Source: Octopus bimaculoides (taxonomy: Eukaryota). From it: a DNA stretch of 64,000 bases. The translations under genes were made by a program, and so were the position numbers. The notes below the pieces were generated by a model, which worked only from the letters and a program-made list of their open reading frames with translations, ran no database searches and was not told where the DNA came from. The stretch covers positions 11,232,707-11,296,706 of the forward strand of contig NC_068984.1 in assembly GCF_001194135.2 (NCBI RefSeq), read 5' to 3'. Within the stretch, counting starts at the first letter, position 1. Each line of letters opens with the position of its first letter. Of this stretch, positions 32,201 through 52,319 are shown one piece after another.

Positions 32201-35200
32201 GTTATCAAGGTGACATAAGTATTGTGAAGATAAAGTAGACCAAACAAAGAAGTCCGGCAAGTTCTAAGTGCTGTTAGTAATGAACAATCTTGTTCATTTG
32301 TTAAGGATGGACCTGAAACCAATGATCTTCTTAATCATAAACCAATGCCTGTGCCATACAGAAATGAAAGAAGTATGATTTGGTTGATGTATAACATCAT
32401 CCTGCATGAAAATACATAGAAAAGGCAGCTGTATTAGTATCAAAAGGTGTGTATATGGAATGATAGTAGCACATTTGTCCTTGCAGATACAAAGGTACGA
32501 ATGTAAGGAAACATGAAGAACCAGGGAAAGCTGCTGAGATGCTTAAAATATCTAAAGTAGAACATGCGCAGTCAATTAGGAAGCACAAGGAAGGCACTAT
32601 CTACAATGACTGGTGGAGCAGTATCATTATCAACCTCTACAAGGAGAAAGGAAATGCTCTGGAAAGAGACAACTACAGATGCATCAAACTAATAAATTAC
32701 ATTATGACTGTTACTTAAAGCGTTTCTGTACAACTGATTAGGAAATGGATTGGTCTAGATGAGATGCAGTTCATGTTTGTGCCAAAAAGGGGTATCACTA
32801 ATGCCCTGGTGAGGAAACTACAGGAGAAGCATTCAGCAAACAATAAGTCACTCTATCTAGCTTTTGTCAATCTGGAGAATTCTTTTGGCTGGATTTGAAG
32901 CTTTATAGTCTGATAATCACTAAAAAACACTAGGTATAGACAGCTGGTTTGTGAAAACTGTACAAGACTTGTACAGATGTGGTGTCAGTAACTATCTTTC
33001 AGGACATACTTCTCAACATCCTTCTGTCTGTTGTAATCTTCCAAGCCATAACATAGCAGTGAAGGTGGACAGATGTTCCAAGGAAAATTGGACCCATACA
33101 CTCATGGAAAATTGGACATAAAAATGATGATAACAGCAGCATTGGAAATTGGAATATATAACCTCTACAATTGGGTCTCTCATGACTATTAGATTTTTTT
33201 GAGTCTCCATCTAACACTTACCGTCTCCCTTCTTCACTTTCTCGTCTGTCACTCACCTCCTTTTCTATCAATGCACCTCCCTATTATCACTATCTTTTTC
33301 CATCATGACACATGCAATGAGTGTTGGCAATGGATTTCATCTGTCCATATTTAAAATCCTACTCCTCATCACTCTTTCACTCATTGCTTTCTCCTCTATC
33401 ACTCACTGATCTCCATCACTCTCTCTCTCATACACATTGCTTCTCCCTCAGTCAGTTTTTCTCCCCATCAATTTCCCACTTCTACTACACCCTCTTACCT
33501 TTACCTCTCCCCATCACATCATTGTACTGTTTCTATTCAGTCTTCTTAACAACAATCGTCACACAGCTATCACTCCCTCATTTGCTTCCTTCCAGTATAT
33601 TCTATTCTATTATCCTATTTCCATCCAATAAGAAAGAAATAACTGTACAGAAGCAACACAGAAAGCACTCTGTTTAGTCTTGCTCTGAACAAGACAACAC
33701 TCTGGTGCTGGTAAACAAATGATTGGAGACATCATCGGATAGAGAAGATTCTCTAGTCTTGCCAAGGTCAAGATAACATCCCTACTGCTGGTGCCATGAT
33801 AAAGTGCATCGAATACACTCTCAAAAGTGATTGGGAATAGGAAGGGTATCTAAGCACAGAAACCATGACAAAAAAGAAAAACATGCAAATAAGAAATGGT
33901 CTCCAACCCCACTAAGAGGGCAGTAACTTTAATAAGAACTGACATGAGCTGTAACAACCCATAAAACCCATACTAGCATGAAAAAGTAGAAGTAAAAACC
34001 ATACCATATGTGCTGTGGTTTGTTGTGATGTTCCTATTGTTTTATGTAAGATGTGTGCGGTGCCTAGTAGTACTATTTTCTGTATGTTACATATATTTGT
34101 TAGTCTTGGTGTGTTTGTTATGCATTAGTCTGAATATTTTTTATCATCCCTAATCCGTCTGTTATGAAAGGAACTGTTTCTGTTTTTAGACTCCACATTC
34201 GAGTTACCTCTATTTCCAGATCTTTGTATTTTGAAAGTTTCTCCATTTCTTTTAGAGAAACGTTGTCATCTGCTGGTATTAATACATCAATTAGAAAGCA
34301 TTTGTTTTTCTTGATGATCTCTGACAACTATAACTGGCCTATTGACCTTAATTTCTCTATCTGTGTGTATTGGCATTATTATTATTATTATTATTATTAT
34401 AAGTAGTAATAAATATCTAAATACTCAGAGATAACAAAAGATTATCAATATTTACCTTTCTGTAAATGTCATCATTTTCTGAGAAATCACCAGCAAATCT
34501 TGGAATTACATGAACGTGAACATGCTGCAACAAATTTAACATATAAGTATAAATAATTTCTTTAGACATGAAAAAAACACATTGAACAATGCAGATAAAT
34601 CAAATTTAACCATTTCGCATTCAGATTACTCTGTCCAATGTAATGCTTATTAATTTACATTGTTTACGAATTAATTATGCATTATCTCACAGCTTCGAGA
34701 TTTCAATGATGTAATTGTTTATTGTTAGAATGACACTGTAGAATAAGTCTGAGAAGCCAGATCTAGCTGGTTTGAACATAAAACGGGCAGAAAGGTTAGG
34801 CTGGATATAGTTTGTTTAAATGCTAAAGGGTCAACAAAAAAATATATAATTATTTTCATTTTTTTCAACCAGTAAAAAAAAAAATTGCTCATAAGCTATA
34901 AAAGCATATTGGAATGAGACAGAGATCATCATTTAATGTTCACTTTTTCATGTTTGCACAGATCAGACAGAATTTGTTAAGGTAGATTTTCTATGGCCAA
35001 CTGCTCTTCTTGTCACTAACCCTCACCTGCTTACATGCAAGTTAGTATATCCTCTGGCCAGACATGTATTTTTTTTACAGAAGACTAAATCACTTATATC
35101 ACAGTAATGCTCATTTTAAATCATTATATGATGTCAAGACACAGGTACACATATACATCTAATTGTCAGCTCCTGTCCAACCCATGCCAGCATAGAAAGT

Positions 35201-38200
35201 GGACGTTAAATGATGAGGATGATGATTATATATATATATATATATATATAAGATGTCACTTAGGTATAGCAATACTAATAACATGGTGTTGGGACTCAAT
35301 ATACATATGCTTCACAATAAAGTATTAGTTGCATATTGAGCATACTAAGAAATTGCATAAATGACAAGAAAACAGGAATTATGCAACCAACTTCCTTAGC
35401 TTACAGTTGTTTCTGCTATAAGATACAGTGCGCTCAGAGATAAGTGCAGATGCTTCACCTTATAGCAGAAATAGATGTAAGTTAATGACATCAATTACAT
35501 TATTCCTGTTACCTCGTCATTTATTTAATTTATTATTACATTCACTCCCCCTCTCTTTCACATACACACAATGGGTTTCTTTTAGATTCCGTCTACCAAA
35601 ACCACTAACAAAGCTTTTGGTTGGCCCAGGGCTTTAGGAGAAGATATTGTACAGCAATACTCAACCAGAAACTATTTGGTTGAGAAGCATGTTTCTTAAC
35701 CACATAGCCATGCCTGTACATGGAGGGTAAAGTTTATAATGCAACTTCCTGAATGAGGCACTTTTCTTTAAAAATCCTTGTTGTTTAGCACTAGCTTGGC
35801 TTTGACAGATCAGACCATCAAAGGCATTCCAGCAACCACTATTTCAGACAGATTATTATAAACAGCATTATCCACAGCATGTCACCATCTCACCTTTTAT
35901 CACAGTCCTTCATTTCATCACTCACCATAGTCTTTCATTACTCACCATGGTCTTCTATCACTTGTCACACACAAGTTGAGAAAAACCAGGACTAGGTGTA
36001 TTTCATTACACCACTATCACAGGTCTACAACTAGACTGAAAAGTTAACTATCATCACTATGGTTTAATGTCCACTTTTCCATGCTTGCATGGATCAGGCA
36101 GAATTTGTTGAGGCAGTTTTTTCTACAGTTAGATGCTCTTCCTGTTGCCAACTCTTATCTATTTCCAAGCAAGGTAATATTTCCCCATGGTCAAACATGC
36201 TTTTCAAGGCAGACTGGAAACAAACAACATAGCTTATATGATGATGAGGATGATGATGATGTTTGCTTACAATCATCACATTATGTCATAACAAGGATGC
36301 ACACAAACACTGTATCATGTGCTATTACTTGCTGAAACCATATTTCCTTCATACATTCCAATCTTTGATATGGTTCCTCCAAGTAGATACCATTGTTATT
36401 ACCAACCACTTTATAGTATGTACTGGATGCATTTTATTGTGCTACCGACACTAGAGAACTTGTATGATAGAATCCACTCGATGAGATATGTTAAATAAAA
36501 TTAAAAAATTTAAAAACCAATTACTCTTACCTTAACACTTTGTCCTGCTTCTAGGCCATCTTGAATAGCAAAAGTCAGAGAAGTTCCATTAAAATGTTTC
36601 TTGACTACATCACCGACTTTGCGTGCTGTACACCATAAATCAGATGTATGCTCATCGCTTACCTCAGAGAAACTAGAAACAACTGGTTTTGGACAAATTA
36701 AAACATCTTCAGTAAAAGTTAAGAAAATAACTTGAACATTGGAACAGAAATTAAAGCAGGTTAGCCATATGCCAGTTAGATGTATGAGAAGTAGAGGTTT
36801 CATACTAAAGTAACTGGTTCATGTGACATCAGGGAACCTGTGAGACACATGTCTAGGGGATAGAGGTATCGAATCTCCTCCATGGCCCTTGACAAGTACT
36901 GCCATCCTGAGCTGAGCTGGGCATAATGGTGACTAAGGGGTAACTCTGTACTCCGCTTGTCTTTCACAGGACTAAATCATTAAAAATTTGTAGTGGTTAC
37001 AATAACAAGATAAAAGAAAATAGACAAGCAATTATTTACAATAAAGGATACGTCCAGGTAATACAGGTTTGATGTTGACAAATGCAAAAGAAAATGGTGT
37101 ATTAAGAAACACTTGTGTTGAAGGAATATCAATGTGACCAAATTTATATGTTTCCTGTTCATCTACAGTGGTATTTTCTAGTGAAAAACAAAAGGAAATT
37201 TAAGATTATTTCAGTCAACTTATGAAAAACAACCTCATTTACCACGAAAACCTGGCCATTTCTGCCATTTCATTAATTTGTCCTAACATCATAACAACCT
37301 CCGCCTACAATACATTTATTATATTTTAGCTTTTACTTGTTTCATCCATTGGACTGTGGCCATGCTGGGGCACCACCTTGAAAGGTTTTAGTCAAACAAA
37401 TTGATCCCAGGACATATCTTAAACTTGGTACTCATGCTATTTGTCTTTTTGCTGAAACACTAAGTTACAAGAATATAAACAAACCAACATCGGTTCTTGA
37501 ATGGTGGGGATGGGTGACAAACAGACACATCTATACACGCAGACACACACACACAATTGGCTTTCACACAGCTTCCATCTCCCAAAACTCACTTACAAAT
37601 CATTGGTTAACTCAGGATTATAGTAGAAGACACTTGTCCAAGGTCTCATGCTTTGGAACTGAATCTGATACTACACAGTCACAAAGCAAGCTTCTTCATT
37701 ACACAGCCATGCCTGTATTCAGTGACACTTTTTATTTTTGCAATTTTATGGCCATTTCCTCCCCTGGCTTGGATAGGGATACAAACCCAAACATTTCCAT
37801 GAAATAAATTTTTGAAATATTTTTTTTTCTTTTTTCATTGAAACTAAATGCATTTACTGTGATCAAAAGGTTGTTTAAACTGAAGCACATTGAATAAGGT
37901 ACCATAGTAAGCAAGACAACAGTTACAAAAATTTGAAGATACAATACTGACACAAAATTGCACTCTATTGTTTTTATGATTTTGGACAGGCCATTATTCT
38001 ATGTACTTCATCATCATTTAACAGCCATTTTCCATGCTGACATGTGTTGGATGGTTTGACAGGAGCCAAGAAGCCAACAGACTGTACCAAGCCCCAGACG
38101 TCTGCTTTGGTATGGTTTCTACAGCTGGATGCTGTTCCTAATGCAAGCCTCTTTGCAAAGTATAGTGGGTGTTTTTTCATGGCACCAGCACTAGCAAGAT

Positions 38201-40102
38201 CACCACAAGACAAGACACCTCACTCAACTGAAGGTGGGATGAGGGTTTAGTATTGAGGGAGGTGGCTTTCTGCCAGGTGATGAGAGGTTAGAGTATGTTA
38301 GAAAGACAGAAACAGGTGTCTTGCAGTAGAAGGGGTACATGGCTATTCCAGTTGGAAAAACAGAGAAGATGATGAAGGGGTATCAGGAAACACCCTCTAT
38401 ACATATTTAGCTACAAGGAACAGGTACCAGATCATACAGTAAAGTTACCTGTGAATGTTACCTATCCACAAGAAGATTTATTTTCTTCATCCCTTGCATG
38501 CCATACAACTGAAAGTGAGCACTGTCTCACAGAGAGGAAAAAAATAAGAAAAGGTAAAAAGAAAACAAAATCTGAGGTATAGGTTGTTGTCATCATCGTT
38601 GCAGCAGTGTCGGAATTGTACACTGGTTAAGCTTATAGTTGTAACTCTATCTACACTATGGCCCAGGTTGTGAGGTTATCAATCAAATCAACCTGATTGA
38701 ATATACAGTAATCCCTCACCTATCGCGCATTCAGTACATCGTGGATTTTTCTGGTTAATATATGTAAATTTATACTGCGGACTCCTCAGTATATCTGGGT
38801 TTCTGTGGCTGATAGCTATTTATATTTTTATAGATTTTAATTATTTCTGTGGAAGGTTTTGGGATGTAAAATCCACGATAGTTGAAGGATTACTGTGCAA
38901 CACTAGGATTGTCCTTGAGTAGTTGTTCTAGTGTCAATGTTGGTATACACTCACTGTGGTGCAAGGAAGGTCAGGGTTCAAGATGTGAGAGAAGCCTGAG
39001 AAAAGAAAGGCATATAGAGAGAAAGAGAGATTAGAAAAGGTAGAAAGAAAAGATGAGAGAGAGAAGAGAGAGAAAGAGTCAAAAGAGAGGAAAAAGATAA
39101 AGAGGAGAAAATATAAGTAGAGAGGGGGAGTGCAAGGGGAAGCAATCAAGAAACAAGAGAGATTTTTTTTCTACTCTAGGCACAAGGCTCGAAATTTTTG
39201 TGGAGGTGGGTGCGGGCAGTGATTAGATCGACCCCAGTACACAACTGGTACTTAATTCATCAACCCCGTAAGGATGAAAGGCAAAGTCAACCTCGGCAGA
39301 ATTTGAACTCAGAACATAACGACAGGCAAAATACCACTAAGCATTTCAACTGGCATGCTAACGATTCTGCCAGCTCACCGCTGGTGATATTAACAATCAT
39401 CATCATTTTATCATCCGCTTCTCCATGTTAACATGGGATAGATTGAATTTGTTGAGGCAGATTTTCTACAGATGGATGCCCTTCCTACCACTAACCCTCA
39501 CCTGCTTCCAACAAAGGTAATATTTGGCCCTGAACAGACATGTTTCCATTGAAGATGGGAAACAAAGGATGTTGCTTGTCTGATATTGATGCTCATGTAT
39601 AACTATCACGTGATACCAAGGCAAGAAGATACTATTACCACACCACACATACATACAGATATACATGAGTTTCTTTCAGTTTCCATCTACCAAATCCACT
39701 CACAAAGCTTTAGTTGGCACAAGACTATAATAGAAGACACTTGCCAAAGGTGCCTTGCAATGGGACAGAACCCAAGACCAATGATTTGGAAGAGGCTTCT
39801 TAACCACATAGCTACCCCGATGAGATTGATGCCTTTTTCCACATTATTCTTCCTCTCAGATTTATTTTAATGCATCTGTTGAAACATATGTCGGTGATAT
39901 GGTGATATAAATGATTTAAACAACATCTTGAGTGTTTGTCTCCATTTTCCATTATTCTTATGTTCTGCAAAACAAGTCTCACTTCTCAGAATTAACTCCC
40001 ACGCAAGTGTGATTACTAATTCCTTAGGCGCTTATGTGACATTTGGGTACCTTGTAATTATTCTTCTTGATCTTTCCTTGTAAACTGAACATTTATATAC
40101 AT

Positions 40103-40163
<61 letters not shown>

Positions 40164-43100
40164 CACCATCACCATTTAACATCAATTTTCCATGCTGGCA
40201 TGGGTTGGACAGTTTGACAGGAGTTGGTAAGGCATGACTTCTATGGTTGGAGATATATATATATATAAATACACACATACACAAACTTCTTTCAGTTTCC
40301 ATCTCCCAAATCGACTCACAAGACTTTGGTCAGCCTAAAGTTATAGTAAAAGACACTTGCCCAAGGTGCCACAGACTGGGATTGAACCTGAAACTATGCA
40401 CCCAGTATAATCTAGAGAGGGGCTTGTGTTAGAATGGCTTCCAGCAGTAGAAACTATGTTGAAATAGAACATACAACATGTGGTCCTCTGGCCTATTTAG
40501 TAGTGCATTCATCATCATCATCATCATCGTTTAATGTCCATTTTCCATGTTGGCATGGGTTGGACAGTTTGACTGAGGTCTGGAGAGCCAGTGGCTGCAC
40601 CAGGCTCCAAGACTATGATAACCCTTCCAACCATGCCACCACAGAAAGCAGACATAAAATGATGACAATTAGTGATGACAGTAATGGAACGATGAGACAG
40701 AACTGTTCCTCAGACAATTTGGCAAAGATAAAAATTCTTACCAGTGGAGAAAGAATATATTTGATTGTAGAGGTCATTACGTCTGTGGTGCCAAACAGGC
40801 ATCTCTAATCGGACATCATGTAATAAATCCATATTGATTTCTGCAGTACATAGCCCTATTCCTTTACTACATTCAGCAATAATGCTTCCCCATGGATCAA
40901 TTACCTGTTGAAAATATGGAGATGTACAAAAATATCACATGACAGTGAGTGCAGAAAAGAATAGGCTTTGAGATTAAAAAATGATGAAGTTATGGAACCC
41001 CGCCTGCCATATGTATGCACACATGCATATCATGACTCATATATAGATCACTTTCCTGATATTTGTACATAATTCTATGCACTGTACATGCACCTTTGAT
41101 AAATTGTAGTGCACCTGAGCACTATAAACAATAATTTCATTATTATGTAGTTTATGAAAGATAAAATGAGTAATATAGGTGGTATGAAGAAGAGTGATGA
41201 CTGGAAGAGGTGGGTTCAAACAGAAGTGGAATGCAGTTAACAAGTCAGTGATGCTGAATAGCGAAAAACAGAAGAAAGTGGGGTGGGTGGGTGCATAATA
41301 TAACAAAGTCTTCTTTTTCTTTTTTTTTTTGTCCACTATAGGTTGATGAATCAGTTAACTCGATGGATTCCTTTTGAATATCTGACACCTTTCAATATAT
41401 TAATAATAGCATACAATTAATCAAAACTGTGCCATTCCAATTCTACCAAAGACATTTTCTAGACAAAGCTAAGAAATAGATTGTTTTGAAAGAGTGGAAC
41501 TCTAAGTTGATAAAGCTACAAATTATCATCAACGTCATCATCTGGTCAAGTTTGCTTGACCATTTTTAACCCATGCATGCTTTCCATCTCAATCCATCAT
41601 TAGTTGAGGGAGGTCTCTGGAGAGGCATCTAGTGTTTATTGTGAGTTGACCTACATAGGTTGTGTTCAGACAACCTGCTCGAGTACGGCCATGCTTTGGC
41701 ATCCATAGCAGTAGATCTCTTGCCAGCAATGTCCTGCAAAGTGCAAGTGCCTTTCCCTTATAATGATGGAAATAGGCAGAAGGTTTTCATACAAAAAGCT
41801 ATAAGTAATAGCATGTAAATATAATAAATAAAAAATAAATATCGCCCTTTTAAAGCCTATCCAGGCTCATGGGCCCAGTTTCCCGGTTTCTATGGTGTAT
41901 GTGTTCCCCCCAGCTGGACGGGACGCCAGTCCATCGCAGCATTACTCAAGGAACAGGAAGAAAGAGTGAGAGAAAGTTGGGGTGAAAGAGTGCAACAGGG
42001 GTCACCACCACCCCCTGCCAGAGCCTCGTGGAGCTTTAGGTGTTTTCGCTCAATAAACACACACAACGCCCAGTCTGGGAATCGAAACCGCGATCCTCCG
42101 ACCACGAGTCCGCTGCCCTAACCACTGGGCCATTGCACCTCCACAGCATGTAAATATAGGGCTACAAAACACTTGGGTAGAAAACTTTGAAGGCTGCTTG
42201 TAAATATAACAGATATTCTAGCATGGACAGCCTTTGATTTCTTTTTATCAAAAAGGATTTTTAAACCAATATTTAAACACTGTCATTCATAGCTTTATCT
42301 ACTTCAAATCCCACCAGTAAAAATGAATTATTTCACGTTTCTTGAAGTTTCTAAATTTTTATGATGTAAACAATGTGTGTGTGTGTGTTGTAAATAAGTG
42401 AGTAGCATGATGGAGAAAAAAAATAACCAGATCAAGGAATTACTGCAGTGTTTTAAAGTCTCTTTATCCCTTTTAAAATAATATTGCCCAAGATATATTT
42501 TCTGATCTGTGGCAAAATGTCCTTAACAAATCAGCCATTTCACTAAGAGATGGTGCCATGCCCATGCTGGTGCCACATAAAAAAGCACCCATGCTGGGGC
42601 CACATATAAAACACCCAAGCTGGTGCCATGTAAAAAGCATCCAATATACTCTATAAAGTGGTTGATGTTAGGAAAGGCATCCAGTCATAGAACCCTTGCC
42701 AAAACAGACAGTTGGAACCTGGTGCAGCTCTCCGTCTGGCCAGCTACTGTAAAATCACCAGCATGGAAAACACCTTAAATGATGATGATGATACAAAATA
42801 CAAAATGGCAGTATATGACTGTAATTATAGAAATACTTTTTTTGCATCTTTTTCTCACCATTGCATGTCCATACGATGAGCGTTTCTTATTATGTCGGCC
42901 AACTTGTGCAGCTGCTATAACATAGCACTGGCTTTCAATGGCACGGCTCCGAAGTAATGACTGGAAATATAAGCAAAACATATTACAGAATACAGTATGT
43001 AGATATATATTCAGACACACACATACAAGGTACAGCAGAAAAATCTGCGGATCTTTTTTAAAACAGGGGCCACATTTTTCATTAATGTTTTACGTAGTGT

Positions 43101-46100
43101 TTTTGGTACCGAAAGGCTTTCAAACTTCGTATACTTATCTATTTTGTGTTATAGAACAGAAAAATATTTTTGTATTCGAATTTATTTCATGTAAAAAATT
43201 GTCTTATTTCGATAATTTCAACCAATCACTGACAAGTATTCAGTTGTTTACATTTACTCCTTTGGCTGATTAAGCGGTGTAAAGCGTATTTAATTTCCAT
43301 AGCTTCGTTTTGCTTTTTTCTTTTTAAATTTGCTGTTTTACCCTAACCCTAACCCTATCACCGATAGAATTGTTTCAGAATCATTTGTTTATGTAGTCGG
43401 CACTTATTGTATATCGGCTGAATGGACGTCAGTGATTGGTTGAAATTACAGAAATACGACAACTTTAACATGGAATAACTTAGGGATTTCTTTTTTTTTT
43501 AAGAAGACTAAAAGAAAAAGATGTTTTATATGACACATTCTACCAGTGTTCCAAGTTTCAAAGTGTTTCGTTAATGAAAAATGTGGCCCCCGTTTTAAAA
43601 ATGATCCAAATCTGCTGTTGAACATTTATCAAGAATGGTAACTCTGGGAGACTTTTTTGCTCCATACCCTGAATACACACATACAAAGCAATAAAAAAAA
43701 ATTTAGAATACAAAATTTCTGAAAGTGGACGGCAAGAACAAGAATAATGTGTTCCAAAGAAAAGAAAATGCATTACAATTACATTGTAACTTTATTTACA
43801 TCTGCCCTCTCCTAGCATATAACCACCTCCCTCAATAGTGCACCCCAATTGTCAAGGGGTTTTAGTCTTGCAAGCTGCAAAGTGACCTCACTAGTGCTGG
43901 TGCCACAAAAAAAAATGCATCAAGCACTCTCTGTAAAGTGGTCGGCATTATGAAGGGCAACTGTGAGGCTGGAGGAACCAGATGGCTAGATAATGAACAG
44001 TCATAGGAACCAAGTGAAGCAAACACTGGAGTATGATGCAGTCCTCAGACCCACCAAATGTTATCAAAACATACAAATCATGCCAGCATGGAAGACAGGT
44101 GTTAAATGAGAGTATAAAATCTTAGGTAAGGTGAGTTAAATGCTGAGAAACAACAACTCAGCCCTTCAGAAATATACAAAATTTAAGATCTGAGTAAATT
44201 GAGCCTTACATGTTCAATTATTGATTCTCATTAGTCACCTTGTTTCAGTTTTGGTTGTACTAAGATCAGATATATTTTTTCTTTTGTCTGATACAACTTC
44301 AATGTTACAAATTACAAGGAGTCTCTCCAACAAAAAAACAAAAAACTGAAGGACGCCTGTTTTCTACTCTTTGATATAATGTTGAGCTATTTCAGTAGCT
44401 TTTGGGAGAAACTGAATAGAGCTGTGCAAGCCAAAAAATAGTTTTTTATCAATGAAATTGCTGGCATTGTTAAGTCCACTTCACAACATTTATCCCTTTA
44501 TACCTCCGACAAATGTCTTCTAATACAAGCACAGGTGAACCCAAAACTTATGAATGAAATTGAATAGACAGAATCAGTGTGGAAGCCTACTGAGTAGAGT
44601 GCACCTGTCCTTGAGTAGCAGACATAAGCTCTTGTCTTGTTTAACATCACTCCTTGGGACTTGTGTGATTTTAGTGAAGTCCACTCTGTTGTAGGCATTC
44701 AGACAAGGTCCCTTGTCTGAGGAAAACTCAACATTTTGATGAACTGCTTCCTACTTTAGTAACCACAAGTTAGGGCTCTATGCTTCTTTTCTCCCACCAG
44801 TCTCCAAAAGTCCTACCAAAGTCCTCTCACTAAGTCACATTTTTAACGATTTTAATTTCACAAAAATTTTACAGAACAAAGCAGTGAATTACAGCACCTT
44901 GGCAATGTTTTCTACCTTCTTTAACCCTTTTGATACCAGTCCACCTACAACCACACCTGATTCTATGATACAAACATCCTGTTTTAAAGTGATCTAAATT
45001 AAAACCATCCTTTAAAAATTTATGTTCCAAACAACAGATTAATAACGACAAAGTTATTTGACTAAATTCTTTATTATTTTCAAAATGAATTGAAACAAAG
45101 GCAGCGTATTCTAACAGAAATAAGGTAAGAAAAGGGTTAATGATGCTTACTTCCCAATGAGCAATACCAGTTGGTTCCATGAAAGCAGAAGGATAAGTTA
45201 ATAATTCTGCACCTTGTCTGGCCAAAATCAAAGCTAATTCTGGGAAACGTAAATCATAACACTCAAAAGAATCAAGGAAAAATAGAATTAGAATTAGTTT
45301 AGGGTCTTGAGGTTCATCATCATCCTTTAACCATTTAACATTTAAAATGGCCATATCCAGCCCAAATATTCTATCAATTTTATGTTCAAACTAGTCAAAT
45401 CTGGCTTCTCATACCCACCCTACAAGGCCATTCTGAAAATAAACAAAGACACATTGAAATCTTTAAACTACAAGATAATGCATAATTAATTCAAAACAAT
45501 GTGAATAAATAAGCATTACATTTGATAAAGTCCACTTTCCATTTTGGCATGGGTTGCACGGTTTGACAGAACCGGGAGAGCAACAGGGCTGCATCAAGCT
45601 CCAATGTCAGTTTTGGAACGGCTTCTATGGCTGGATGTCGTTCCTAATGCCAACCACTTTACAGTGGGTACCGAGTGTTTTGCTCAAGCACTGACTCTTT
45701 CAACAAAATCAAGAAATCATGAATTTTATTATTTTTATTTTTATCTATGTTAGTATAGGTGGAGCGGGTTTCTACCTGCGTACATTTGTACACTGCTAGA
45801 ATAACCGTATTTACTCCACTTACTACACTAACCACTCAGCACATAGCAACATTACTTCTAAGGCGACAAGTATCTGTTATTATGTATATTTACCTAGTGA
45901 TTCATTACTACTTCGGTAAGTACGGTAACGGCTATCACAAGGTTCTAAGGTTAAACTATATATATATCCAGAGTTGTCTCCCATGCTAGCTGAAAGAGTC
46001 AATACAACGTTAGTTCTTAAATGTATTTTCCCTTTTACTCTTTTACTTGTTTCAGTCATTTGACTGCAGCCATGCTGGAGCACCGCCTTTAGTCGAACAA

Positions 46101-49100
46101 ATCGACCCCAGGACTTATTCTTTGTACGCCTAGTACTTATTCTATAGGTTTCTTTTGCCGAACCACTAGGTTACGGGGACGTAAACACACCAGCATCGGT
46201 TGTCAAGCGATGTTGGGGGGACAAACACACAAACATATACACACACACACACACACACACANNNNNNNNNNNNNNNNNNNNNNNNNNNNNNNNNNNNNNN
46301 NNNNNNNNNNNNNNNNNNNNNNNNNNNNNNNNNNNNNNNNNNNNNNNNNNNNNNNNNNNNNNNNNNNNNNNNNNNNNNNNNNNNNNNNNNNNNNNNNNNN
46401 NNNTATATATATATATATATATATATATATGACGGGCTTCTTTCAGTTTCCGTCTACCAAATCCACTCACATGGCTTTGATCGGCCCAAGGCTATAGTAG
46501 AAGACACTTGCCCAAGGGGCCACGCAGTGGGACTGAACCCGGAACCATGTGGTTCGTAAGCAAGCTACTTACCACACAGCCACTCCTACGCCTTGCTAAA
46601 TATATTTTTTTTTAGTTCAGCTTTTTAATGATGCTATTTATACGACAGTGACACATGTTGAAAACTATTGCACAATGTCCAAACAAAATGACAAACACAC
46701 ACACACACATCTACGCGTATGATAAACTTCTGTTTCTGCAAATCAAATCCACTCAAAAAGTGTTGGTCAGCCCAAACCTATTGTAGAAGTCACCCAAGAC
46801 GTTGCACAGTAGGACTAAACCAGAAACCACTATGCATGCTGTATGCATACGTCTGTTACATGTGTGCATGTGCATGCACAGGTACATGCACGTGCATGCA
46901 CAGGTATGTGCATGTGTGAAAGCATGCATTAACACTGCTTGGGTAGCAATATACTTTTTATGTCCTACACAAGCCACAAGTGATGCAGTTTGTCAGTTCA
47001 GTATTCAATGATCAGCGGAACAAAAGTGCAGGGTGGTGGAAATATCACAAAGGGGTCTGAAATAATTTGTTTCTGAGTGTGTTTATATATGAGTACACAT
47101 ATTGACCGCATATATCACAGAGCCTCTCAAAACTAGAGACCATTAATTATTACCCAAGTTTAATAAGTCAAATCACCATGAACCAAAAAACAAGTTCAAC
47201 CCATCAGCAGCTGCCTAACAGATATCATTATACTTTCAACAGCAAAAGGATACAATCCCTAAGCCAACTTTTCCAACAGGTGTCACTACAGGGGGTTTAA
47301 TACATTTGCCAGGTGTTGTATAATCACTCTCATGTAAACTCAAGCCTTTGATGTCTGCATCAAACATATGGATTTTTTCATAGGTTGTAACAACATGGCC
47401 ATCACTGTTGATAATAATATGTGTATTTTTCACAAATTGGTCCGTGTTCTGAAAGTAAAAATGATAAATCTGATAATGTCAAGTTTGTCTTCGTTTCTAC
47501 AAAACAGCAAAAAGGAATTGGAAAGGAATTGAACATAATAAATGGCAAACTCAAGTAAGAAAAAAAAAAGAAAAAAAAAGCCATATGAAGAAAGCTTATC
47601 AAGTCATGCCAAAACCATGAACAGTTGTAGTCGCTATGACTGACTGCAAATAATTATTACTGTTATCACATAGTCAGGGAGAACGAATGACCCTTTATTG
47701 GTTCTTTAAAACTGGTGGCCATGAAGAAGGTATCCTCAAACCAGACAGTGCTTTCAATAGAGCAAACTATTGCCAGATTGGATTGGAGCCTGGTGCAGCC
47801 TTCTGGCTCACCAGCCCTCAATCAAACCGTCAAACCCATGCCAGCATGGAAAGTGGACGTTAAACGACGATGATGACGAAACTCTGCTCAAGGCACCCAA
47901 AGACCAGGTGATGGTGATAAATGGAGTACGCAGGCCATAATAGGATTTGAACTCAGAATCAAGAGAGCTGAAACACATACTGCAAAGAACCTACCTGGTT
48001 TAACACTCAACAATTCCACCAATCCACTACCCTAGACTGGTACTTCACTTACTGACCCATAGACGGATGAAAGACAAAGTTGACCTCTTCAGCATTTGAA
48101 CATAAAATGCAAGGAACCAGAATACAAATCAATTCATCCAATGTTCTAACCATTCTGACTGATTTAGTTCCAACTTAGAATCCATCTATCCATGCAATGC
48201 CTACCTGCACGCATATATACCATAATGCATATCTTCATTTGCACATGCACATATGCATTTGCACATACATGTATGATGTATGTTTTCATTCATACATACA
48301 TGCATACATAATGCATGCATATATGTATTCATTCATTCTTTCTCTCTTTCACTCTCAGAAAATTAACAAAATCTAAAACCCAATGATAGATTGATTACTT
48401 TAATGAAGCCGTTTGCAAAATTCTATTTAAATATCTAATGATACCAGTACAATCATCATCATCAACGTTTAACGTCCGCTTTCCATGCTAGCATGGGTTG
48501 GACGATTTAACTGATCCAGATGGCTACACAAGGCTCCAATCTGATCTGGCAATGTTTCTGCAGTTGGATGCCCTTCCTAATGCCAATCACTCCGAGAGTG
48601 TAGTGGGTGCTTTTACATGCCACCGGCACGAAGGCCAGTCAGGCGGTACTGGCAACGGCCACACTCAAAATGATGTATTTTACGTGCCACCTGCACAGGA
48701 GCCAGTCCAGCGGCACTGGCAATGATCTCGCTCAAATGACTTTTCACAAGCCACCGGCACAAGTGCCAGGAAGGTGACGCTAGTAACGATCACACTGGAA
48801 CAGTGGTGCCGTCACGATTTCGCTTTCGCTCGCAAGCCGAGTTTAGTTCCAATGAAGGAGATGTTGGCATGGGGGCCAGTCACCGAATTTAGTTCGATTT
48901 CGATTTCACTTGCCTCAACAGGTCTTCGCAAGCGGAATTTAGTGTCCAATGAAGGAAGGTACACATAAGTAGGCTGGCTACATCCCTGGCAGAGGCCTTG
49001 GGTTTTGGTCTCACTTAGCTTGCCGGGTCTTCTAGGAACAAGATTACTGATGTCATGGTTTTGATTTCAAATCTCATGACAGTTTATCACATTTCAAACA

Positions 49101-50506
49101 CCAAGCTGATCAGTTAATGTTCTGGCTTATTTACCTAAAGAATTGACAGTTTCTATCCTATTATTAAGTCCTTTATAAAGACACCTTAGGTAATTTAGTC
49201 AAAGAGCATTCTATGATACTGCAAACTAATAGCAGGTATAAACATTTTAACAAAAGTATAATTTTAATTTAAGAAAAGAGAAAAGAAATAACGAGCAAAT
49301 ATATACGTACTTTTTGATGAAATCCACCCAACGACAACCATATTTGTAGTTCTTTAGCAACACCCTTGTATTTAGATACTAAATGACCATCAAGACTCTC
49401 AGATTGTTCCAAAGACTGCTTTATGGATTCTCCAATATAATCAAAACATTCTGGTAAAAATACCATCTGAAATATCAAGAAATATTAAATCAATCAATCA
49501 AAACTTATGTGGGTTAACGAGTTAGAAGGCTTCAGCAGGTTAAATATTTTGTCTCTCATCAGTTATTCTGAAAGTTCAGCATTTTAAAGTTCATACCTAG
49601 TTGTTAATCTACATATCATCATCATCATCATTCGATGTGCACTTTTCCATGCTTGCATGGATTGGAAGGAATTTGAGACAGGTACTCTTCCAGTTGCCAA
49701 CACTCACCTGTTTCCAAGCAGGGTAATATTTTCCCAAGGGCAGACATGTTCTCATGGTGTATTGGAAATGAATGACACTGCTTGTATGACAGTGATACTC
49801 ATTTACAATTATCACAAGACAAGGAAAGACACACAAATACATACATACATATATACATACGTACGCACGTATGTACATGCCAGTGGCATGTAAAAAGCAC
49901 CCGCTACACTCTCAGAGTGCTTGGTGTCAGGGCATCCAGCTGTAGAAACCTTACCAGATCAGATTGGAACTTGGTGCAGCCTTCTGGCTTGCCAGTTCTC
50001 AGTCAAACTGTCCAACCTGCGCCAGCATAGAAAGCGGACATTAAACAATGACAATGGTGATGGCTTCTTTCAGTTTCCATCTACAAAATTCACTCACAAG
50101 GCATCAGTCAGTTTGGAGCTGTAGTAGAAGGCATTTGCCCAAGGTATCACACAATGGGACTGAGCAACTAAACCCAAAACCATCAAGTCACAAAGTGAAC
50201 TTCTCAATCCCACAGCTATGCCTGCACCTACTTTGTTCTTTAGCCATTGGAGAAGAAAAGCAACTGTGGTTTTAAGACATCTATATTCAAATAGTTACAT
50301 AATGCTTTCATACACCTACCTGTACTCCTTGAGATTTGGCCTTCTCAATAAGCGATCTGCAAACAGAAAAGTTCTCTTCTTTATCCGCAGACGATGTTAA
50401 CTGGCACACAGCTATACGTGGGTGTTGTTTACCAACTTTTTCCACAATGCTAGACATCTTGCGTAAATGATGTCTACACCCAGTTGAAGCAGTACGGACA
50501 ACTAAC
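29136..50506 (-). CDS. NitFhit: NitFhit fusion protein (Nit1-type deaminated-glutathione amidase domain + Fhit dinucleoside-triphosphate hydrolase domain); complement(join(29136..29231,34456..34524,36531..36706,37052..37177,40742..40904,42859..42960,45151..45261,47254..47448,49311..49466,50320..50506)); first exon not firmly located
   Basis: Ten exons give one continuous stop-free frame with matching phases. The nitrilase triad E (FLPECF), K (YEKIH) and C (CYDLRFPE) and the HIT motif HVHVH are present. Length is about 443 aa from the Met at 50457. Confidence 0.95.
29553..29781. mobile_element. hAT (Charlie-like) MITE
   Basis: TIRs cagtggttctca / tgagaaccacta. 8-bp TSD gtatagct / gtatagat. 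Confidence 0.85.
29794..30149 (+). mobile_element. tRNA-derived SINE, head D + tail X
   Basis: Head gtggaggtgcaatggtccagtggttagg and tail ctgtggagtggtccgccacttgcacgttaatttcacg. Near-identical to 62909-63230. Confidence 0.85.
31255..31430. mobile_element. piggyBac-like MITE family F, partial
   Basis: cccaaatattctacccgttttatgttcaaa...ccctacaatgtcattctaaaa is shared with 34606-34834 and 45327-45530. Confidence 0.65.
31728..31890 (+). repeat. Family C repeat with (GAT)n tail
   Basis: gagtggttggcgttaggaagggcatccagctgtag...gcggacgttaaacgatgatgat. Confidence 0.85.
32390..33200 (+). mobile_element. LINE RT remnant
   Basis: Degenerate RT N-terminal motifs ([24 protein letters not shown]). Confidence 0.65.
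33990..34375 (-). mobile_element. Non-LTR retrotransposon remnant with restriction-like endonuclease (RLE) domain
   Basis: NRP..V..., [42 protein letters not shown] is a PD-(D/E)xK RLE signature. Confidence 0.8.
34456..34524 (-). CDS. NitFhit: NitFhit exon with histidine triad ([23 protein letters not shown])
   Basis: ttgttgcag| and |gtaaat. The HxHxH HIT motif and NDxIY are present. Confidence 0.96.
34606..34834. mobile_element. piggyBac-like MITE family F
   Basis: Ends ttaaccattt... and ...taaagggtcaa (degenerate TTAA-CCC / GGG-TTAA). Confidence 0.7.
36531..36706 (-). CDS. NitFhit: NitFhit exon, Fhit core ([10 protein letters not shown]...[18 protein letters not shown])
   Basis: 58 full codons after the split His codon. 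The QDGxEAGQ motif is present, donor gtaaga. Confidence 0.95.
36707..37051 (-). other. U12-type (minor spliceosome) GT-AG intron in the Fhit domain
   Basis: 5' splice site GTATCCTTT (37051-37043). Branch-like TTTTCTTAAC (36727-36718) lies about 11 nt from the exon. The intron is 345 nt. Confidence 0.88.
37052..37177 (-). CDS. NitFhit: NitFhit exon, linker and start of Fhit domain ([43 protein letters not shown])
   Basis: ttttcactag| with phase-1 entry matching the Nit exon. [13 protein letters not shown] resembles FHIT SFALVNRKPVVPG. It ends at the U12 donor GTATCCTTT. Confidence 0.94.
37990..38335 (-). repeat. Family C repeat, long copy
   Basis: ttccatgctgacatgtgttgga...ctacagctggatgc core. 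Confidence 0.7.
38705..38897. mobile_element. Tigger-like MITE
   Basis: TIRs tacagtaatccctc / gaaggattactgtg. Confidence 0.7.
39170..39385 (-). mobile_element. SINE family A
   Basis: ggatgaaaggcaaagtcaacctcggcagaatttgaactcagaac (reverse complement of the core). Confidence 0.8.
40742..40904 (-). CDS. NitFhit: NitFhit exon, end of Nit domain ([54 protein letters not shown])
   Basis: ttcaacag| acceptor. There is no stop after RRNDLY, and the exon ends at a phase-1 donor G|gtaaga. Confidence 0.94.
41824..42144 (-). mobile_element. tRNA-derived SINE, head D + tail Y, young insertion
   Basis: Perfect 14-bp TSD agcatgtaaatata (41810-41823 and 42145-42158). The head matches 62909 and the tail is gcgatggactggcgtcccgtccag. 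Confidence 0.88.
42859..42960 (-). CDS. NitFhit: NitFhit exon ([34 protein letters not shown])
   Basis: tttccag| and |gtgaga. It follows the Nit1 pattern LLRARAIETQCYVVAAAQ. Confidence 0.96.
43020..43680. mobile_element. Non-autonomous TIR DNA element containing a (CCCTAA)n motif
   Basis: Inverted subterminal repeats tttaaaacaggggccacatttttcattaa (~43060) and ttaatgaaaaatgtggcccccgttttaaaa (~43575). Confidence 0.55.
44921..45140. mobile_element. piggyBac-like MITE
   Basis: TTAA-CCCTTT...AAAGGG-TTAA ends (TTAA target duplication). Confidence 0.85.
45151..45261 (-). CDS. NitFhit: NitFhit exon with catalytic Cys ([37 protein letters not shown])
   Basis: 37 codons carrying the CYDLRFPE nucleophile motif, donor gtaagc. 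Confidence 0.96.
45327..45530. mobile_element. piggyBac-like MITE family F
   Basis: It starts tttaaccatttaacattt and matches 34606-34834 in the opposite orientation. Confidence 0.7.
46040..46590 (-). mobile_element. SINE family B (gcttcccaacc...ccttgggcaagtgtcttc head, CA/TA microsatellite middle, cagtcaaatgactgaaacaag tail), interrupted by a gap
   Basis: The same structure occurs at 5220-5510 (+) and 37330-37715 (-). Head-only copies lie at ~39660-39820, 40270-40400, 50060-50225, 51930-52050, 53460-53620 and 55305-55440. Confidence 0.8.
46262..46403. other. Assembly gap (N run)
   Basis: Run of N between (CA)n and (TA)n. Confidence 0.99.
47254..47448 (-). CDS. NitFhit: NitFhit exon with catalytic Lys ([30 protein letters not shown]...[10 protein letters not shown])
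   Basis: actttcag| acceptor, 65 codons, ending at the U12-type donor GTATCCTTT. Confidence 0.95.
48455..48990 (-). repeat. Family C repeat, long copy with internal subrepeats
   Basis: (ATC)n end, with repeated tttacgtgccaccggcac-like units. Confidence 0.8.
49311..49466 (-). CDS. NitFhit: NitFhit exon with catalytic Glu ([12 protein letters not shown]...[11 protein letters not shown])
   Basis: tttcag| and |gtacgt, 52 codons. FLPExFD and WLSLGGFH are Nit1 motifs. Confidence 0.95.
50320..50506 (-). CDS. NitFhit: NitFhit exon: presequence-like segment, internal Met and Nit N-terminus ([62 protein letters not shown])
   Basis: tttcag| acceptor and |gtaggt donor. IAVCQLTS resembles the Nit1 VAVCQVTS motif. 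Confidence 0.92.
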
Positions 50507-51636
50507 CTGAAATGAAATATATTCAGATGTAATATTATTTATTTAATCAGTTGGGTGAGTATGACATTTTAATTAGGCAAACTTGCAAAGAATCGAAAAT
50601 TAATGACTTCTGTTTTAGAATCACAATCCTCACCAATTCCAGGTTGCTGCTGACAAGACCATCATTATCTTAATACACCTGCCATCTTTAATCTTATCTT
50701 TTACTTGTTTCAGTCACTATACTGTGGCCATGCTGGGGCACTGCCTAGAATTTTTTTGTCAAACAAATCAACCCCAGTACTTATTCTATTGGTCTCTTTT
50801 GGCAAACCGCTAAGTTACAGGGACATAAACACACCAGTTGTCAAGTGTCAGTCATTTATTTAAACTTTCTCTGCTAACTCATCAAATTCCATTATTTGAA
50901 TTTGGTAATTTTCTAAGATTTTAATTCTTGTGTATAAGGGGCCCACCGAAGTTGGTTTAAATCCAGTCCTGATTGTGATGGTATGAATGTAATAATTGAT
51001 GGCAGTGAACTGAGTGAAAACAGTGGAAGATAGCCATGGAAGAGTACATGCCAAAAACAAAGACAAATAGAGAGTTTGAATATCAGGATTTCAGCTCCTT
51101 GGACGAAACGATAAAGCAGGAGTTAGAGCAATAGATGTGAAAATGATAATGACTACGATGGATTATGACAGGTTGACTTTATTTTCCTTGGTTAGTAAAA
51201 CAGAACCAGTGACAACAGACATGACAACCAAAAGAAAAAGAAACATGTCCTTGTACCGAGAAGTAATTAATATTAATTAACTGAGGCATAGATGTGACTC
51301 ATCATTAATTTATCTCTACTTCACTTCACATGCCAAATACAAAACAGCATTAGGGGGTTTTTTTTTAGTCTTTTGTTTGTAGTTGTTGATTTCTTTTTTT
51401 TTTTTTTTGATAAGATAGTTGCTGTGAATTTCTTTTATCAATTCTTTCTTTTGTCTTTTCTTATTATCATTTCTATTTCAACAAACTTTCTATTACAAAA
51501 ATTGTCTCACCCCCACCAATACAAATGAGACCTCTTTTACCATGTGTCCATGATAGACAAGGGATAGTGTAACAGTAGATGTACTCCAGATATACCAGCA
51601 GCAGTTACATGACCCAGAATTTAGTTAATAGAATTT

Positions 51637-52110: not shown

Positions 52111-52319
52111 TTTCCCTCATGTTCACTGGTTTGTAAACAATGGTCTCCTGTCGGTATCAAAGGATATCCAAACATCCTCACATGTTTTTAACATGTTGTG
52201 CGATCTTTGTAAACAAAAGCATCCTTAAAAAGCTTTGTCTGTTTCCAGTTTCCTGAATAAAATATGTCCAGGTTGTTAGCTTTCAACAAACTGAAAGATT
52301 ATTATTATCTCATTTGGAG

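What the first reader, a model, noticed from the sequence alone, without database searches (positions are those of the whole stretch)
36707..47253. Two U12 minor-spliceosome introns in one gene, each at a conserved active-site residue
Seen: two of the nine introns between the identified coding exons begin GTATCCTTT and carry a U12-type branch site (TTCCTTGAT, TTTTCTTAAC) about 10 nt from the AG. The other seven have ordinary U2 donors. One U12 intron sits exactly before the nucleophile Cys codon (GLGI|CYD). The other splits the His of PG-H-VL, the equivalent of FHIT His35. Known: U12 introns are a very small fraction of introns and are often rate-limiting. Inference: each half of the fusion may have brought an ancestral minor intron, so both enzyme activities would depend on the minor spliceosome. 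Retention of the downstream one could yield a Nit-active, Fhit-dead product. These introns are also strong characters for dating fusion or fission.
Basis: partly seen in the sequence, partly recalled or inferred. Interest (0 to 1): 0.8.

Follow-up and report, generated by a model that had tools for sequence, protein, structure and literature searches.

The report
Two conserved minor-spliceosome introns in NitFhit
The octopus NitFhit fusion gene does contain two rare U12-type (minor-spliceosome) introns; each was inherited from one of the two genes that fused, and one is the counterpart of the catalogued human FHIT minor intron, so this is a tidy, largely expected case.

Summary
The gene is Octopus bimaculoides NitFhit, on the minus strand, with CDS 50665..29136, 11 coding exons and 10 introns. 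Intron 4 (47253..45262, phase 0, VGLGI|CYD) and intron 8 (37051..36707, phase 1, inside the His of PGH) have perfect U12 donors (GTATCCTTT). Their branch sites (TTTTCCTTGATT, ATTTTCTTAACT) put the branch A 10-13 nt from the AG. The other eight introns score as U2. The N gap lies inside intron 4, within one interspersed repeat, and affects no exon or reading frame.

Both sites carry U12 signals in six other protostomes, including an AT-AC version in Ixodes and a GT-AT version in Ostrea. The Fhit intron corresponds to the published human and mouse FHIT minor intron (intron 5), and the human donor 12-mer is identical. The Nit intron is also U12-like in the unfused Nit1 of a hemichordate. It is absent from vertebrate NIT1, which has a U2 intron 15 nt upstream.

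So each half brought its own ancient minor intron into the fusion. The introns predate the fusion and therefore do not date it. Their position at active-site codons looks coincidental, and the Nit-only isoform idea is untested. This is a new member of a known kind, of modest interest.

The parts
29136..50665 (-). Coding span of the NitFhit gene (11 coding exons, 10 introns); product = P0001, 470 aa, N-terminal CN_hydrolase (Nit) plus C-terminal HIT (Fhit)
   Evidence: Exact spliced mapping reproduces P0001 with its stop codon; Pfam CN_hydrolase 2.9e-69 and HIT 1.9e-25; 1EMS NitFhit match 3.8e-132
47254..47448 (-). Exon 4, ends ...VGLGI
45262..47253 (-). Intron 4: U12-type GT-AG intron, phase 0, immediately before the catalytic Cys codon
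   Evidence: PWM U12 5'ss +15.8 bits against U2 -1.4; U12 signals at the same site in 7 other species, including AT-AC in Ixodes
47245..47253 (-). U12 5' splice site GTATCCTTT of intron 4
   Evidence: the 12-mer ATTGTATCCTTT is identical to published minor-intron donors (Hmbs, Zdhhc11, Fam92a; scores 96.6/98.3)
45270..45281 (-). Branch-site 12-mer TTTTCCTTGATT of intron 4 (branch A 10 nt before the 3' splice site)
   Evidence: 11.4 bits; distance; compare mouse Snrpe BPS TTTTCCTTGATC, score 86.5
46262..46403 (.). Assembly gap (142 N) inside intron 4, in the internal microsatellite of one interspersed repeat
   Evidence: Its flanks align collinearly to one intact repeat copy at 37330-37709; no exon is missing
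45151..45261 (-). Exon 5, starts with the catalytic Cys (CYDLRFPE...)
   Evidence: Cys aligns with Cys169 of 1EMS
37052..37177 (-). Exon 8, first Fhit-domain exon, ends ...KPVLPG plus the C of the His codon
36707..37051 (-). Intron 8: U12-type GT-AG intron, phase 1, inside the His codon equivalent to FHIT His35; orthologue of human/mouse FHIT minor intron 5
   Evidence: PWM U12 5'ss +15.0 bits against U2 +0.9; conserved in 6 other protostomes; human/mouse FHIT listed as a minor-intron gene; human exon 6 starts at the AT of His35
37043..37051 (-). U12 5' splice site GTATCCTTT of intron 8
   Evidence: the 12-mer GACGTATCCTTT is identical to the human FHIT minor-intron donor (score 90.87)
36717..36728 (-). 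Branch-site 12-mer ATTTTCTTAACT of intron 8 (branch A 12-13 nt before the 3' splice site)
   Evidence: 10.3 bits; distance; compare human KCMF1 BPS TTTTTCTTAACT, score 92.3
36531..36706 (-). Exon 9, starts with the AT of the His codon (HVLICPKP...)
37178..40741 (-). Intron 7 (U2-type, phase 1): the linker intron between the Nit and Fhit halves, present at the equivalent place in all seven protostomes sampled

Best explanation
The window holds the Octopus bimaculoides NitFhit gene, a single ORF joining a Nit1-type amidase to an Fhit-type dinucleotide hydrolase. Two of its ten introns are genuine U12-type GT-AG introns. [quoted passage not shown] The Fhit-half intron is the orthologue of human/mouse FHIT minor intron 5 (same codon, same phase). 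The Nit-half intron is the orthologue of a U12-like intron in the unfused Nit1 of a hemichordate and was lost from vertebrate NIT1. In the taxa sampled, the two genes are fused in protostomes and separate in cnidarians, hemichordates, amphioxus and vertebrates. The simplest history is a genomic, intron-preserving fusion in the protostome stem lineage that placed two single-minor-intron genes in one transcript. Shown: the sequences, positions, phases, PWM class and conservation. Inferred: actual splicing by the minor spliceosome, the timing of the fusion, and that mature NitFhit mRNA needs two minor-spliceosome events. The position at the Cys and His codons is most likely coincidental.
For: The gene model is exact, and the splice-site solution is unique at both junctions. 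It is 100% identical to the NCBI model P0001. PWMs derived from published mouse/human minor introns separate 15 of 15 introns at the two orthologous sites (U12 minus U2 of at least +6.2 bits) from all 66 other introns (at most -8.2 bits) in 10 loci. Both octopus donor 12-mers are identical to catalogued minor-intron donors, one of them human FHIT itself. The U12 motifs persist at both sites in Argonauta, Acanthosepion, Haliotis, Ostrea, Lingula and Ixodes, with terminal-dinucleotide switching typical of U12 introns: AT-AC in Ixodes at the Nit site and GT-AT in Ostrea at the Fhit site. Ptychodera unfused Nit1 has act|GTATCCTTG...TTTGCTTAACATGGCAG| at IGLAT|CYD. [quoted passage not shown] Unfused Nit1 proteins are found in cnidarians, hemichordates and amphioxus and in vertebrates, while fused proteins were seen only in protostomes. 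The literature reports that minor-intron density is on average highest in molluscs and that human minor introns are mostly conserved there.
Against: No RNA-seq or junction reads were available, so splice-site use rests on the NCBI model and on protein collinearity. My PWMs come from 77 mammalian rows and a small U2 set; they are not intronIC or SpliceRack matrices. Some orthologues have weaker elements: the cuttlefish donor GTATCTTT, the Ixodes Fhit BPS TTCCTCAGC (4.2 bits) and the Ptychodera BPS TTGCTTAAC (6.6 bits). The raw count of GTATCCTT in the window is at chance level. The equivalence with FHIT rests on the published 12-mers and primer sequences, because no vertebrate FHIT locus could be fetched. 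The fusion timing rests on a limited taxon sample. No cnidarian genomic locus was obtained; P0245 gave only a transcript.
Confidence: 0.9

Rival explanations
1. The two introns are ordinary U2-type introns whose donors and branch regions resemble U12 consensus by chance.
For: GTATCCTT occurs at the chance rate in the window (2 observed, 2.02 expected). The genome is AT-rich, so T-rich branch-like motifs are common: 29 BPS 12-mers of 10 bits or more in 128 kb.
Against: Both 8-mers fall exactly on in-frame exon ends, and each has a strong BPS 10-13 nt from the AG. U2 donor scores are -1.4 and +0.9 bits, against +6.9 to +12.4 for the other eight introns. The U12 motifs are retained at both sites in every other species sampled, from molluscs to a tick and a hemichordate, and termini switch to AT-AC and GT-AT, which U2 introns do not tolerate as a rule. 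Human FHIT has the identical donor and is catalogued as minor.
Confidence: 0.03
2. The introns are functionally coupled to the active sites. Regulated retention, especially of the short intron 8, produces a Nit-active, Fhit-dead protein, or minor-spliceosome activity acts as a throttle on both enzyme activities. Selection for this keeps the introns at the catalytic codons.
For: Read-through of intron 8 stops after 6 codons ([11 protein letters not shown]), leaving an intact Nit domain. Olthof et al. report that retained minor introns are significantly shorter than minor introns that show no retention, and intron 8 is only 345 nt. Both positions have been kept across the protostome-deuterostome divergence.
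Against: No expression data were examined. The retained transcript would carry a premature stop upstream of two further exon junctions, the usual trigger for nonsense-mediated decay. The intron length is not conserved (345 nt in octopus, 1738 in Argonauta, about 523 kb in human). A U2-type intron also abuts the HVHVH triad (intron 9), so closeness to catalytic residues is not specific to the U12 introns. Vertebrates lost the Nit intron without losing the enzyme.
Confidence: 0.07
3. The U12 introns were gained independently in several lineages at 'proto-splice' sites rather than inherited, so they say nothing about the ancestral genes.
For: Vertebrate NIT1 lacks the Nit intron and has a nearly different intron set, which shows that intron turnover does occur in this gene.
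Against: Position, phase and intron class are identical in 8 species for the Nit site and in 7 species plus human and mouse for the Fhit site. The four other Nit-half introns of the hemichordate also match the protostome positions. U12 intron gain is regarded as very rare (established knowledge).
Confidence: 0.02
4. The structure is an assembly or annotation artefact, for example a mis-join across the N gap or a wrongly predicted junction.
For: A 142-N gap of estimated length lies inside intron 4.
Against: The gap flanks are two collinear halves of one repeat element. Exons on both sides are in order, orientation and frame. Protein collinearity with 1EMS and with all orthologues leaves no missing residues. 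Intron 8 has no gap at all.
Confidence: 0.02

Closest known systems
Human/mouse FHIT minor intron (FHIT intron 5; listed in Table S2 of Olthof et al. 2019, PMC6717393, the paper that introduces MIDB)
   Same: Same codon (His35 equivalent), same phase 1 and same GT-AG U12 subtype. The human donor 12-mer GACGTATCCTTT is identical to the octopus one, and the BPS is of the TCCTTAAC type.
   Different: The human intron is 522,707 nt and the mouse one 551,319 nt. The literature places FRA3B fragile sites in FHIT intron 5. The octopus intron is 345 nt and lies in a fused NitFhit gene rather than a stand-alone FHIT.
NitFhit 'Rosetta stone' fusion protein of C. elegans and D. melanogaster (PDB 1EMS)
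   Same: Same domain order and catalytic residues. The octopus protein aligns end to end with 1EMS (E = 3.8e-132), with Cys191 matching Cys169 and the HxHxH triad conserved. The fusion in flies and worms and the separate mammalian genes are described in PMC4860965.
   Different: From my own knowledge, not tested here: C. elegans lacks the minor spliceosome and so cannot retain these introns as U12, and Drosophila NitFhit is not among the few fly U12 genes. The octopus, other molluscs, Lingula and Ixodes keep both.
Genes with more than one minor intron
   Same: Two U12 introns in one transcript. Mouse has 722 minor introns in 666 genes and human 770 in 714, so at most about 8% of minor-intron genes have more than one.
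   Different: Here the pair can be traced to the fusion of two separate single-minor-intron genes. It did not arise by internal duplication or by family expansion (the latter comparison rests on my own knowledge).
Vertebrate NIT1
   Same: Orthologous Nit1 amidase (51-59% identity in the Nit domain). It shares the HWE| phase-0 intron.
   Different: It has no intron before the Cys codon. A U2-type intron lies 15 nt upstream (K|IGLAxCYD), and three of its four core introns are at other positions. NIT1 is absent from the nine text-held supplementary files of the mouse/human minor-intron catalogue paper.

Membership tests
U12-type (minor-spliceosome) intron | 5' splice site matching /RTATCCTT and scoring far better on a U12 than on a U2 donor matrix | tested here: met
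   Intron 4: +15.8 against -1.4 bits. Intron 8: +15.0 against +0.9 bits. Both 12-mers are identical to catalogued minor donors with published scores of 96.6/98.3 and 90.9.
U12-type (minor-spliceosome) intron | Branch-site TCCTTRAY-like motif close to the 3' splice site (published optimum 11-13 nt) | tested here: met
   TTTTCCTTGATT (11.4 bits, 10 nt after the A) and ATTTTCTTAACT (10.3 bits, 12-13 nt after the A). Near-identical published BPS sequences score 81-92, above the cut-off of 65.
U12-type (minor-spliceosome) intron | Class conserved at orthologous positions, with AT-AC/GT-AG subtype switching | tested here: met
   15 of 15 introns at the two sites in 8 species are U12-like. The Ixodes Nit intron is AT-AC and the Ostrea Fhit intron is GT-AT. 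Human and mouse FHIT come from the literature.
U12-type (minor-spliceosome) intron | Removal depends on U11, U12, U4atac and U6atac snRNPs | not testable with these tools
   This needs knockdown, minigene or RNA-seq experiments.
U12-type (minor-spliceosome) intron | The host organism has a minor spliceosome | not tested
   The window holds no snRNA gene (Rfam: 0 hits). The literature reports minor introns in molluscs at the highest average density, 0.26%.
NitFhit fusion protein | One ORF with an N-terminal CN_hydrolase domain (Glu-Lys-Cys triad) and a C-terminal HIT domain (HxHxH) | tested here: met
   Pfam CN_hydrolase residues 14-266 and HIT residues 309-399 of the draft protein. The 1EMS alignment has LPE, K and C aligned with Glu54, Lys127 and Cys169, and HVHVH is present.
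Orthologue of the human FHIT minor intron | Same codon and phase as the FHIT exon 5/6 junction | tested here: met
   The octopus junction is CCTGGAC|...|AT (phase 1). The human exon-side bases are GAC and the mouse ones GCC. Human exon-6 primers start ATGT.CTTGTGTGCCC, that is the AT of His35, with a 147-bp product running to ...SMQ. This rests on the literature; no FHIT genomic locus was fetched.
   In Pristis pectinata and Cervus elaphus NIT1 the nearest intron is at K|IGLA, 15 nt upstream, with donors GTAAGTGG and GTGGGC (U12 minus U2 of -33 and -21 bits). NIT1/Nit1 has 0 occurrences in the nine text-held supplementary files of Olthof et al. 2019.

The most novel reading that the evidence does not exclude
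The Nit-half intron would be an uncatalogued ancient bilaterian minor intron that vertebrates lost during a near-complete re-patterning of NIT1 introns. In addition, in protostomes the pair of minor introns would make NitFhit output doubly dependent on minor-spliceosome activity, with retention of the short Fhit-half intron used physiologically to uncouple Nit from Fhit activity (a Nit-only product or regulated decay).
Probability: 0.08. Interest if true: 0.5.

Novelty: new member of a known kind. Interest (0 to 1): 0.3.

Why it matters
This is a clean worked example of three known principles. U12 introns are extremely stable in position and class, here across the protostome-deuterostome divergence. 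A gene fusion can stack two minor introns into one transcript. Lineages such as vertebrates can lose a minor intron that their relatives keep (NIT1). For the Nit1-Fhit pair, a classic 'Rosetta stone' case, it shows that the fusion kept both parental exon-intron structures. That argues for a genomic read-through type of fusion rather than retroposition, and the taxon sample places the fusion on the protostome stem. The practical value is modest: a pair of good marker introns for annotating NitFhit, Nit1 and Fhit genes, and a natural two-minor-intron reporter. It opens no long-standing question.

Tried and rejected
1. The raw motif count is not evidence: GTATCCTT occurs 2 times against 2.02 expected. 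I argued from placement instead.

2. Full-text literature searches for FHIT + U12-type, NIT1 + minor intron, and NitFhit + U12 each gave 0 papers. U12-type + nitrilase gave one paper, which I judged irrelevant from its title and abstract and did not open.

3. The single text-held supplementary file of the intronIC/IAOD paper has no FHIT or NIT1 entry. The supplements of the 2024 'Taxonomy of introns' paper and of PMC7507305 are not held. I therefore could not check whether MIDB or IAOD already list the octopus introns.

4. Look-ups of human NIT1 isoform X2 and Hypanus NIT1 isoform X2 returned nothing, because only the longest product of a gene is on record. I used Pristis and Cervus instead.

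5. The coral Pocillopora Nit1 look-up returned only a 1.5-kb transcript contig, so no cnidarian intron data were obtained.

6. No vertebrate or invertebrate stand-alone FHIT locus could be fetched, because the look-ups were exhausted and the mammalian gene exceeds 100 kb. FHIT evidence comes from the literature.

7. Rfam and ARAGORN scans of the window found nothing.

8. I considered 'intron sliding' for the vertebrate U2 intron 15 nt upstream of the lost U12 site. I set it aside because three of the four vertebrate core introns are at new positions, which fits general turnover better.

9. I considered a special link between U12 introns and catalytic codons. I rejected it because the U2 intron 9 abuts the His triad and intron 2 lies 5 codons from the catalytic Glu.

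Full report
**What is in the window.**
Reading 36500-47500 showed that the finding's motifs are reverse complements, so the gene is on the minus strand. I assembled nine exons by eye and by frame. They read through without stops and carry an N-terminal CN_hydrolase domain and a C-terminal HIT domain. The draft is 100% identical over its whole length to P0001, 'deaminated glutathione amidase isoform X2 [Octopus bimaculoides]', 470 aa. Exact spliced mapping of P0001 onto the window gives 11 coding exons and 10 introns, with CDS 50665..29136. The protein aligns end to end with the C. elegans NitFhit crystal structure 1EMS (E = 3.8e-132). Octopus Cys191 matches worm Cys169, the Lys and Glu of the triad are aligned, and the HVHVH motif is intact.

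**The assembly gap, tested first.**
The N run 46262-46403 lies inside intron 4, about 1 kb from either splice site, between a (CA)n and a (TA)n run. The left and right flanks align, in the same order and orientation, to the two adjoining halves of an intact copy of an interspersed repeat at 37330-37709. The gap therefore interrupts the internal microsatellite of a single repeat element. Exon 4 ends ...VGLGI and exon 5 starts CYDLR.... These residues are contiguous in every orthologue and in 1EMS, so no exon or frame information is lost. Only the intron length (nominally 1992 nt) is uncertain.

**The observation.**
- Intron 4 (47253..45262, phase 0) has donor att|GTATCCTTTTGC and 3' end TTTTTCCTTGATTCTTTTGAG|.
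- Intron 8 (37051..36707, 345 nt, phase 1, CCTGGAC|...|AT) has donor gac|GTATCCTTTATT and 3' end ATTTTCTTAACTTTTACTGAAG|.
- The branch adenosines sit 10 and 12-13 nt upstream of the acceptor. The catalogue paper cites 11-13 nt as optimal.
- For both junctions only one donor/acceptor pair reproduces the protein.

GTATCCTT occurs just twice in 64 kb on both strands, but shuffles give 2.02 on average, so the count itself means nothing. The placement is what matters. These are the only two GT-type 12-mers scoring above 12 bits on a U12 donor matrix in the window, and both sit on in-frame exon ends of one gene. Each has a BPS of 10 bits or more (background 0.23 per kb) in the correct 10-nt window.

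I could not run intronIC. Instead I built U12 donor and branch-site matrices from 77 mouse/human rows of Table S2 of Olthof et al. 2019 (PMC6717393), and a U2 donor matrix from the 65 non-candidate introns of the ten loci studied.
- Octopus intron 4 scores +15.8 bits (U12) against -1.4 (U2), with BPS 11.4 bits.
- Octopus intron 8 scores +15.0 against +0.9, with BPS 10.3 bits.
- The other eight introns score -10 to -35 bits on U12 minus U2.

Independently of my matrices, the two octopus donor 12-mers are identical to catalogued minor donors. ATTGTATCCTTT is the donor of Hmbs, Zdhhc11 and Fam92a (published scores 96.6/98.3). GACGTATCCTTT is the donor of human FHIT itself (90.87). Near-identical branch 12-mers in that table score 81-92, against the paper's cut-off of 65.

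**Conservation.**
I fetched the genomic loci of six further NitFhit genes and mapped each annotated protein exactly: Argonauta hians, Acanthosepion pharaonis, Haliotis asinina, Ostrea edulis, Lingula anatina and Ixodes scapularis.
- In all six, both positions and phases are kept.
- Both carry U12 donors (GTATCCTT, GTATCCTA, GTATCCTC or GTATCTTT) and TCCTTRAC-like branch sites 7-14 nt from the acceptor.
- All other introns are U2-like.
- Two hallmarks of U12 introns appear. The Ixodes Nit-site intron is AT-AC (atc|ATATCCTTTCAT...GATCCTTGACCACCGACCCTCAC|). The Ostrea Fhit-site intron is GT-AT.

Across the ten loci, 15 of 15 introns at the two sites have U12 minus U2 of at least +6.2 bits, and 66 of 66 others have at most -8.2 bits. 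Weaker members exist: the cuttlefish donor GTATCTTT, the Ixodes Fhit BPS (4.2 bits) and the Ptychodera BPS (6.6 bits).

**The Fhit half and human FHIT.**
Olthof et al. list Fhit/FHIT as a minor-intron gene in both mouse and human.
- Mouse: donor GCC|GTATCCTTT, BPS TTGTCCTTAACC.
- Human: donor GAC|GTATCCTTT, BPS TGGGCCTTAACA.
- The introns are 551,319 and 522,707 nt long.

The exon-side bases fit GGA-C or GGC-C, that is Gly34 plus the first base of His35. [quoted passage not shown] It also gives exon-6 primers that begin ATGT.CTTGTGTGCCCGCTGCGG (the AT of the His35 codon onward) and end at ...SMQ, with a 147-bp product. The human minor intron is therefore FHIT intron 5, in which that study places FRA3B fragile sites. 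It lies at the same codon and phase as octopus intron 8.

**The Nit half.**
NIT1/Nit1 does not occur in any of the nine text-held supplementary files of that paper. In the NIT1 loci of a sawfish (Pristis pectinata) and a deer (Cervus elaphus) there is no intron before the Cys codon. The nearest intron is 15 nt upstream (K|IGLAxCYD), phase 0, and clearly U2-type. Only the HWE| intron is shared with the invertebrate structure.

A search with the Lingula Nit domain recovered unfused Nit1 proteins (CN_hydrolase only, about 313-340 aa) from corals, an octocoral, three hemichordates and amphioxus. The Ptychodera flava locus has five introns at exactly the positions of the Nit half of protostome NitFhit. 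The one at IGLAT|CYDLR (phase 0, 383 nt) reads act|GTATCCTTGTTT...TATTTGCTTAACATGGCAG|, with U12 minus U2 of +19.6 bits. So the Nit-half minor intron predates both the protostome-deuterostome split and the fusion, and it was lost on the lineage leading to jawed vertebrates.

**History and mechanism.**
Fused proteins appeared only in protostomes: molluscs, a brachiopod, annelids, nemerteans, arthropods, a priapulid and nematodes. Unfused proteins appeared in cnidarians, hemichordates, amphioxus and vertebrates. The simplest reading is one fusion on the protostome stem. Both parental exon-intron structures survive, and a phase-1 U2 linker intron (octopus intron 7) sits just after the Nit domain in all seven protostomes. 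This favours a genomic read-through or splice-in fusion over retroposition, which is an inference.

By established knowledge, the GTATCCTTT donors pair with U11 and the branch sites with U12, and catalysis uses U4atac/U6atac.U5. A mature NitFhit mRNA thus needs two minor-spliceosome events. The literature places the highest average minor-intron density in molluscs and finds most human minor introns conserved there. The Fhit-half intron is therefore an expected orthologue.

**What does not hold.**
- The introns predate the fusion, so they cannot date it. The domain architecture across taxa does that.
- The 'active-site' placement is not U12-specific. The U2 intron 9 lies directly before HVHVH, and intron 2 lies five codons before the catalytic Glu.
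- Retention of intron 8 gives [11 protein letters not shown] and retention of intron 4 gives [10 protein letters not shown]. Both are premature stops upstream of further junctions, so decay is at least as likely as a stable Nit-only protein. Nothing here tests this.

**Verdict.**
The finding is a new, well-supported member of a known class. One intron is the orthologue of a catalogued human minor intron. The other is an ancient minor intron that vertebrates lost. I found no paper discussing U12 introns in NitFhit or NIT1, and I could not check whether MIDB or IAOD already list them. Two minor introns in one gene is uncommon but known: at most about 8% of mouse or human minor-intron genes have more than one. 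Interest is modest.

Noticed in passing
L007 (Pristis NIT1) and L008 (Cervus NIT1), compared with L010 and L001-L006: Vertebrate NIT1 shares only the HWE| intron with the five-intron Nit structure kept by the hemichordate and all protostomes. Its other core introns are at new positions (YxQLA|RE phase 2, phase 1 before G, K|IGLA phase 0). The last is a U2 intron exactly 15 nt upstream of the lost U12 site.
   Followed up: partly
L006 (Ixodes) intron 8, TIAVQ|DGPDA: The tick has a phase-0 intron at the position of the human FHIT exon 6/7 boundary (FSMQ|DG, inferred from published primers). The six lophotrochozoans instead have an intron at GQxVx|HVHVH.
   Followed up: no
L004 (Ostrea edulis) intron 7: The Fhit-site U12 intron has non-canonical GT-AT termini (gtc|GTATCCTCAG...TTTCCTTGACCAAAGCACAT|atg). 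No GT-AG alternative reproduces the annotated protein.
   Followed up: partly
window 7863-8651 (-): A Tc1/mariner-like transposase remnant (weak DDE_3 hit, 1.8e-05, below the Pfam cut-off), broken by the 413-N gap at 7904-8316.
   Followed up: partly
window 37330-37709, 45990-46590, 39649-39818, 40253-40398, 55312-55460 and others: Many copies of an interspersed SINE-like repeat with an internal CA/TA microsatellite fill the introns. One copy hosts the assembly gap in intron 4.
   Followed up: partly
window 52167 (-), 20240 (-), 58126 (+), 26018 (+): AT-type U12 donor-like 12-mers (ATATCCTT/ATATCCTC, 14-16 bits) lie outside the NitFhit coding exons. The one at 52167 is about 1.5 kb upstream of coding exon 1 on the gene's strand. 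They are probably chance hits.
   Followed up: no
window 19500-19862 (+): A 120-aa ORF with a weak PHD-finger-like Cys/His motif (E = 0.0013, below the cut-off). It may be a fragment of a mobile element.
   Followed up: partly
one search hit list (e.g. P0055, P0056, P0068, P0091, P0093): Numerous unnamed NitFhit fusion proteins of about 470 aa (50-53% identity) sit on 2-10 kb JGI/ENA metagenome contigs. Their source organisms are unknown, and the short contigs suggest genes with few or no introns.
   Followed up: no
It may be a targeting peptide, analogous to the alternative N-termini of mammalian NIT1.
   Followed up: no
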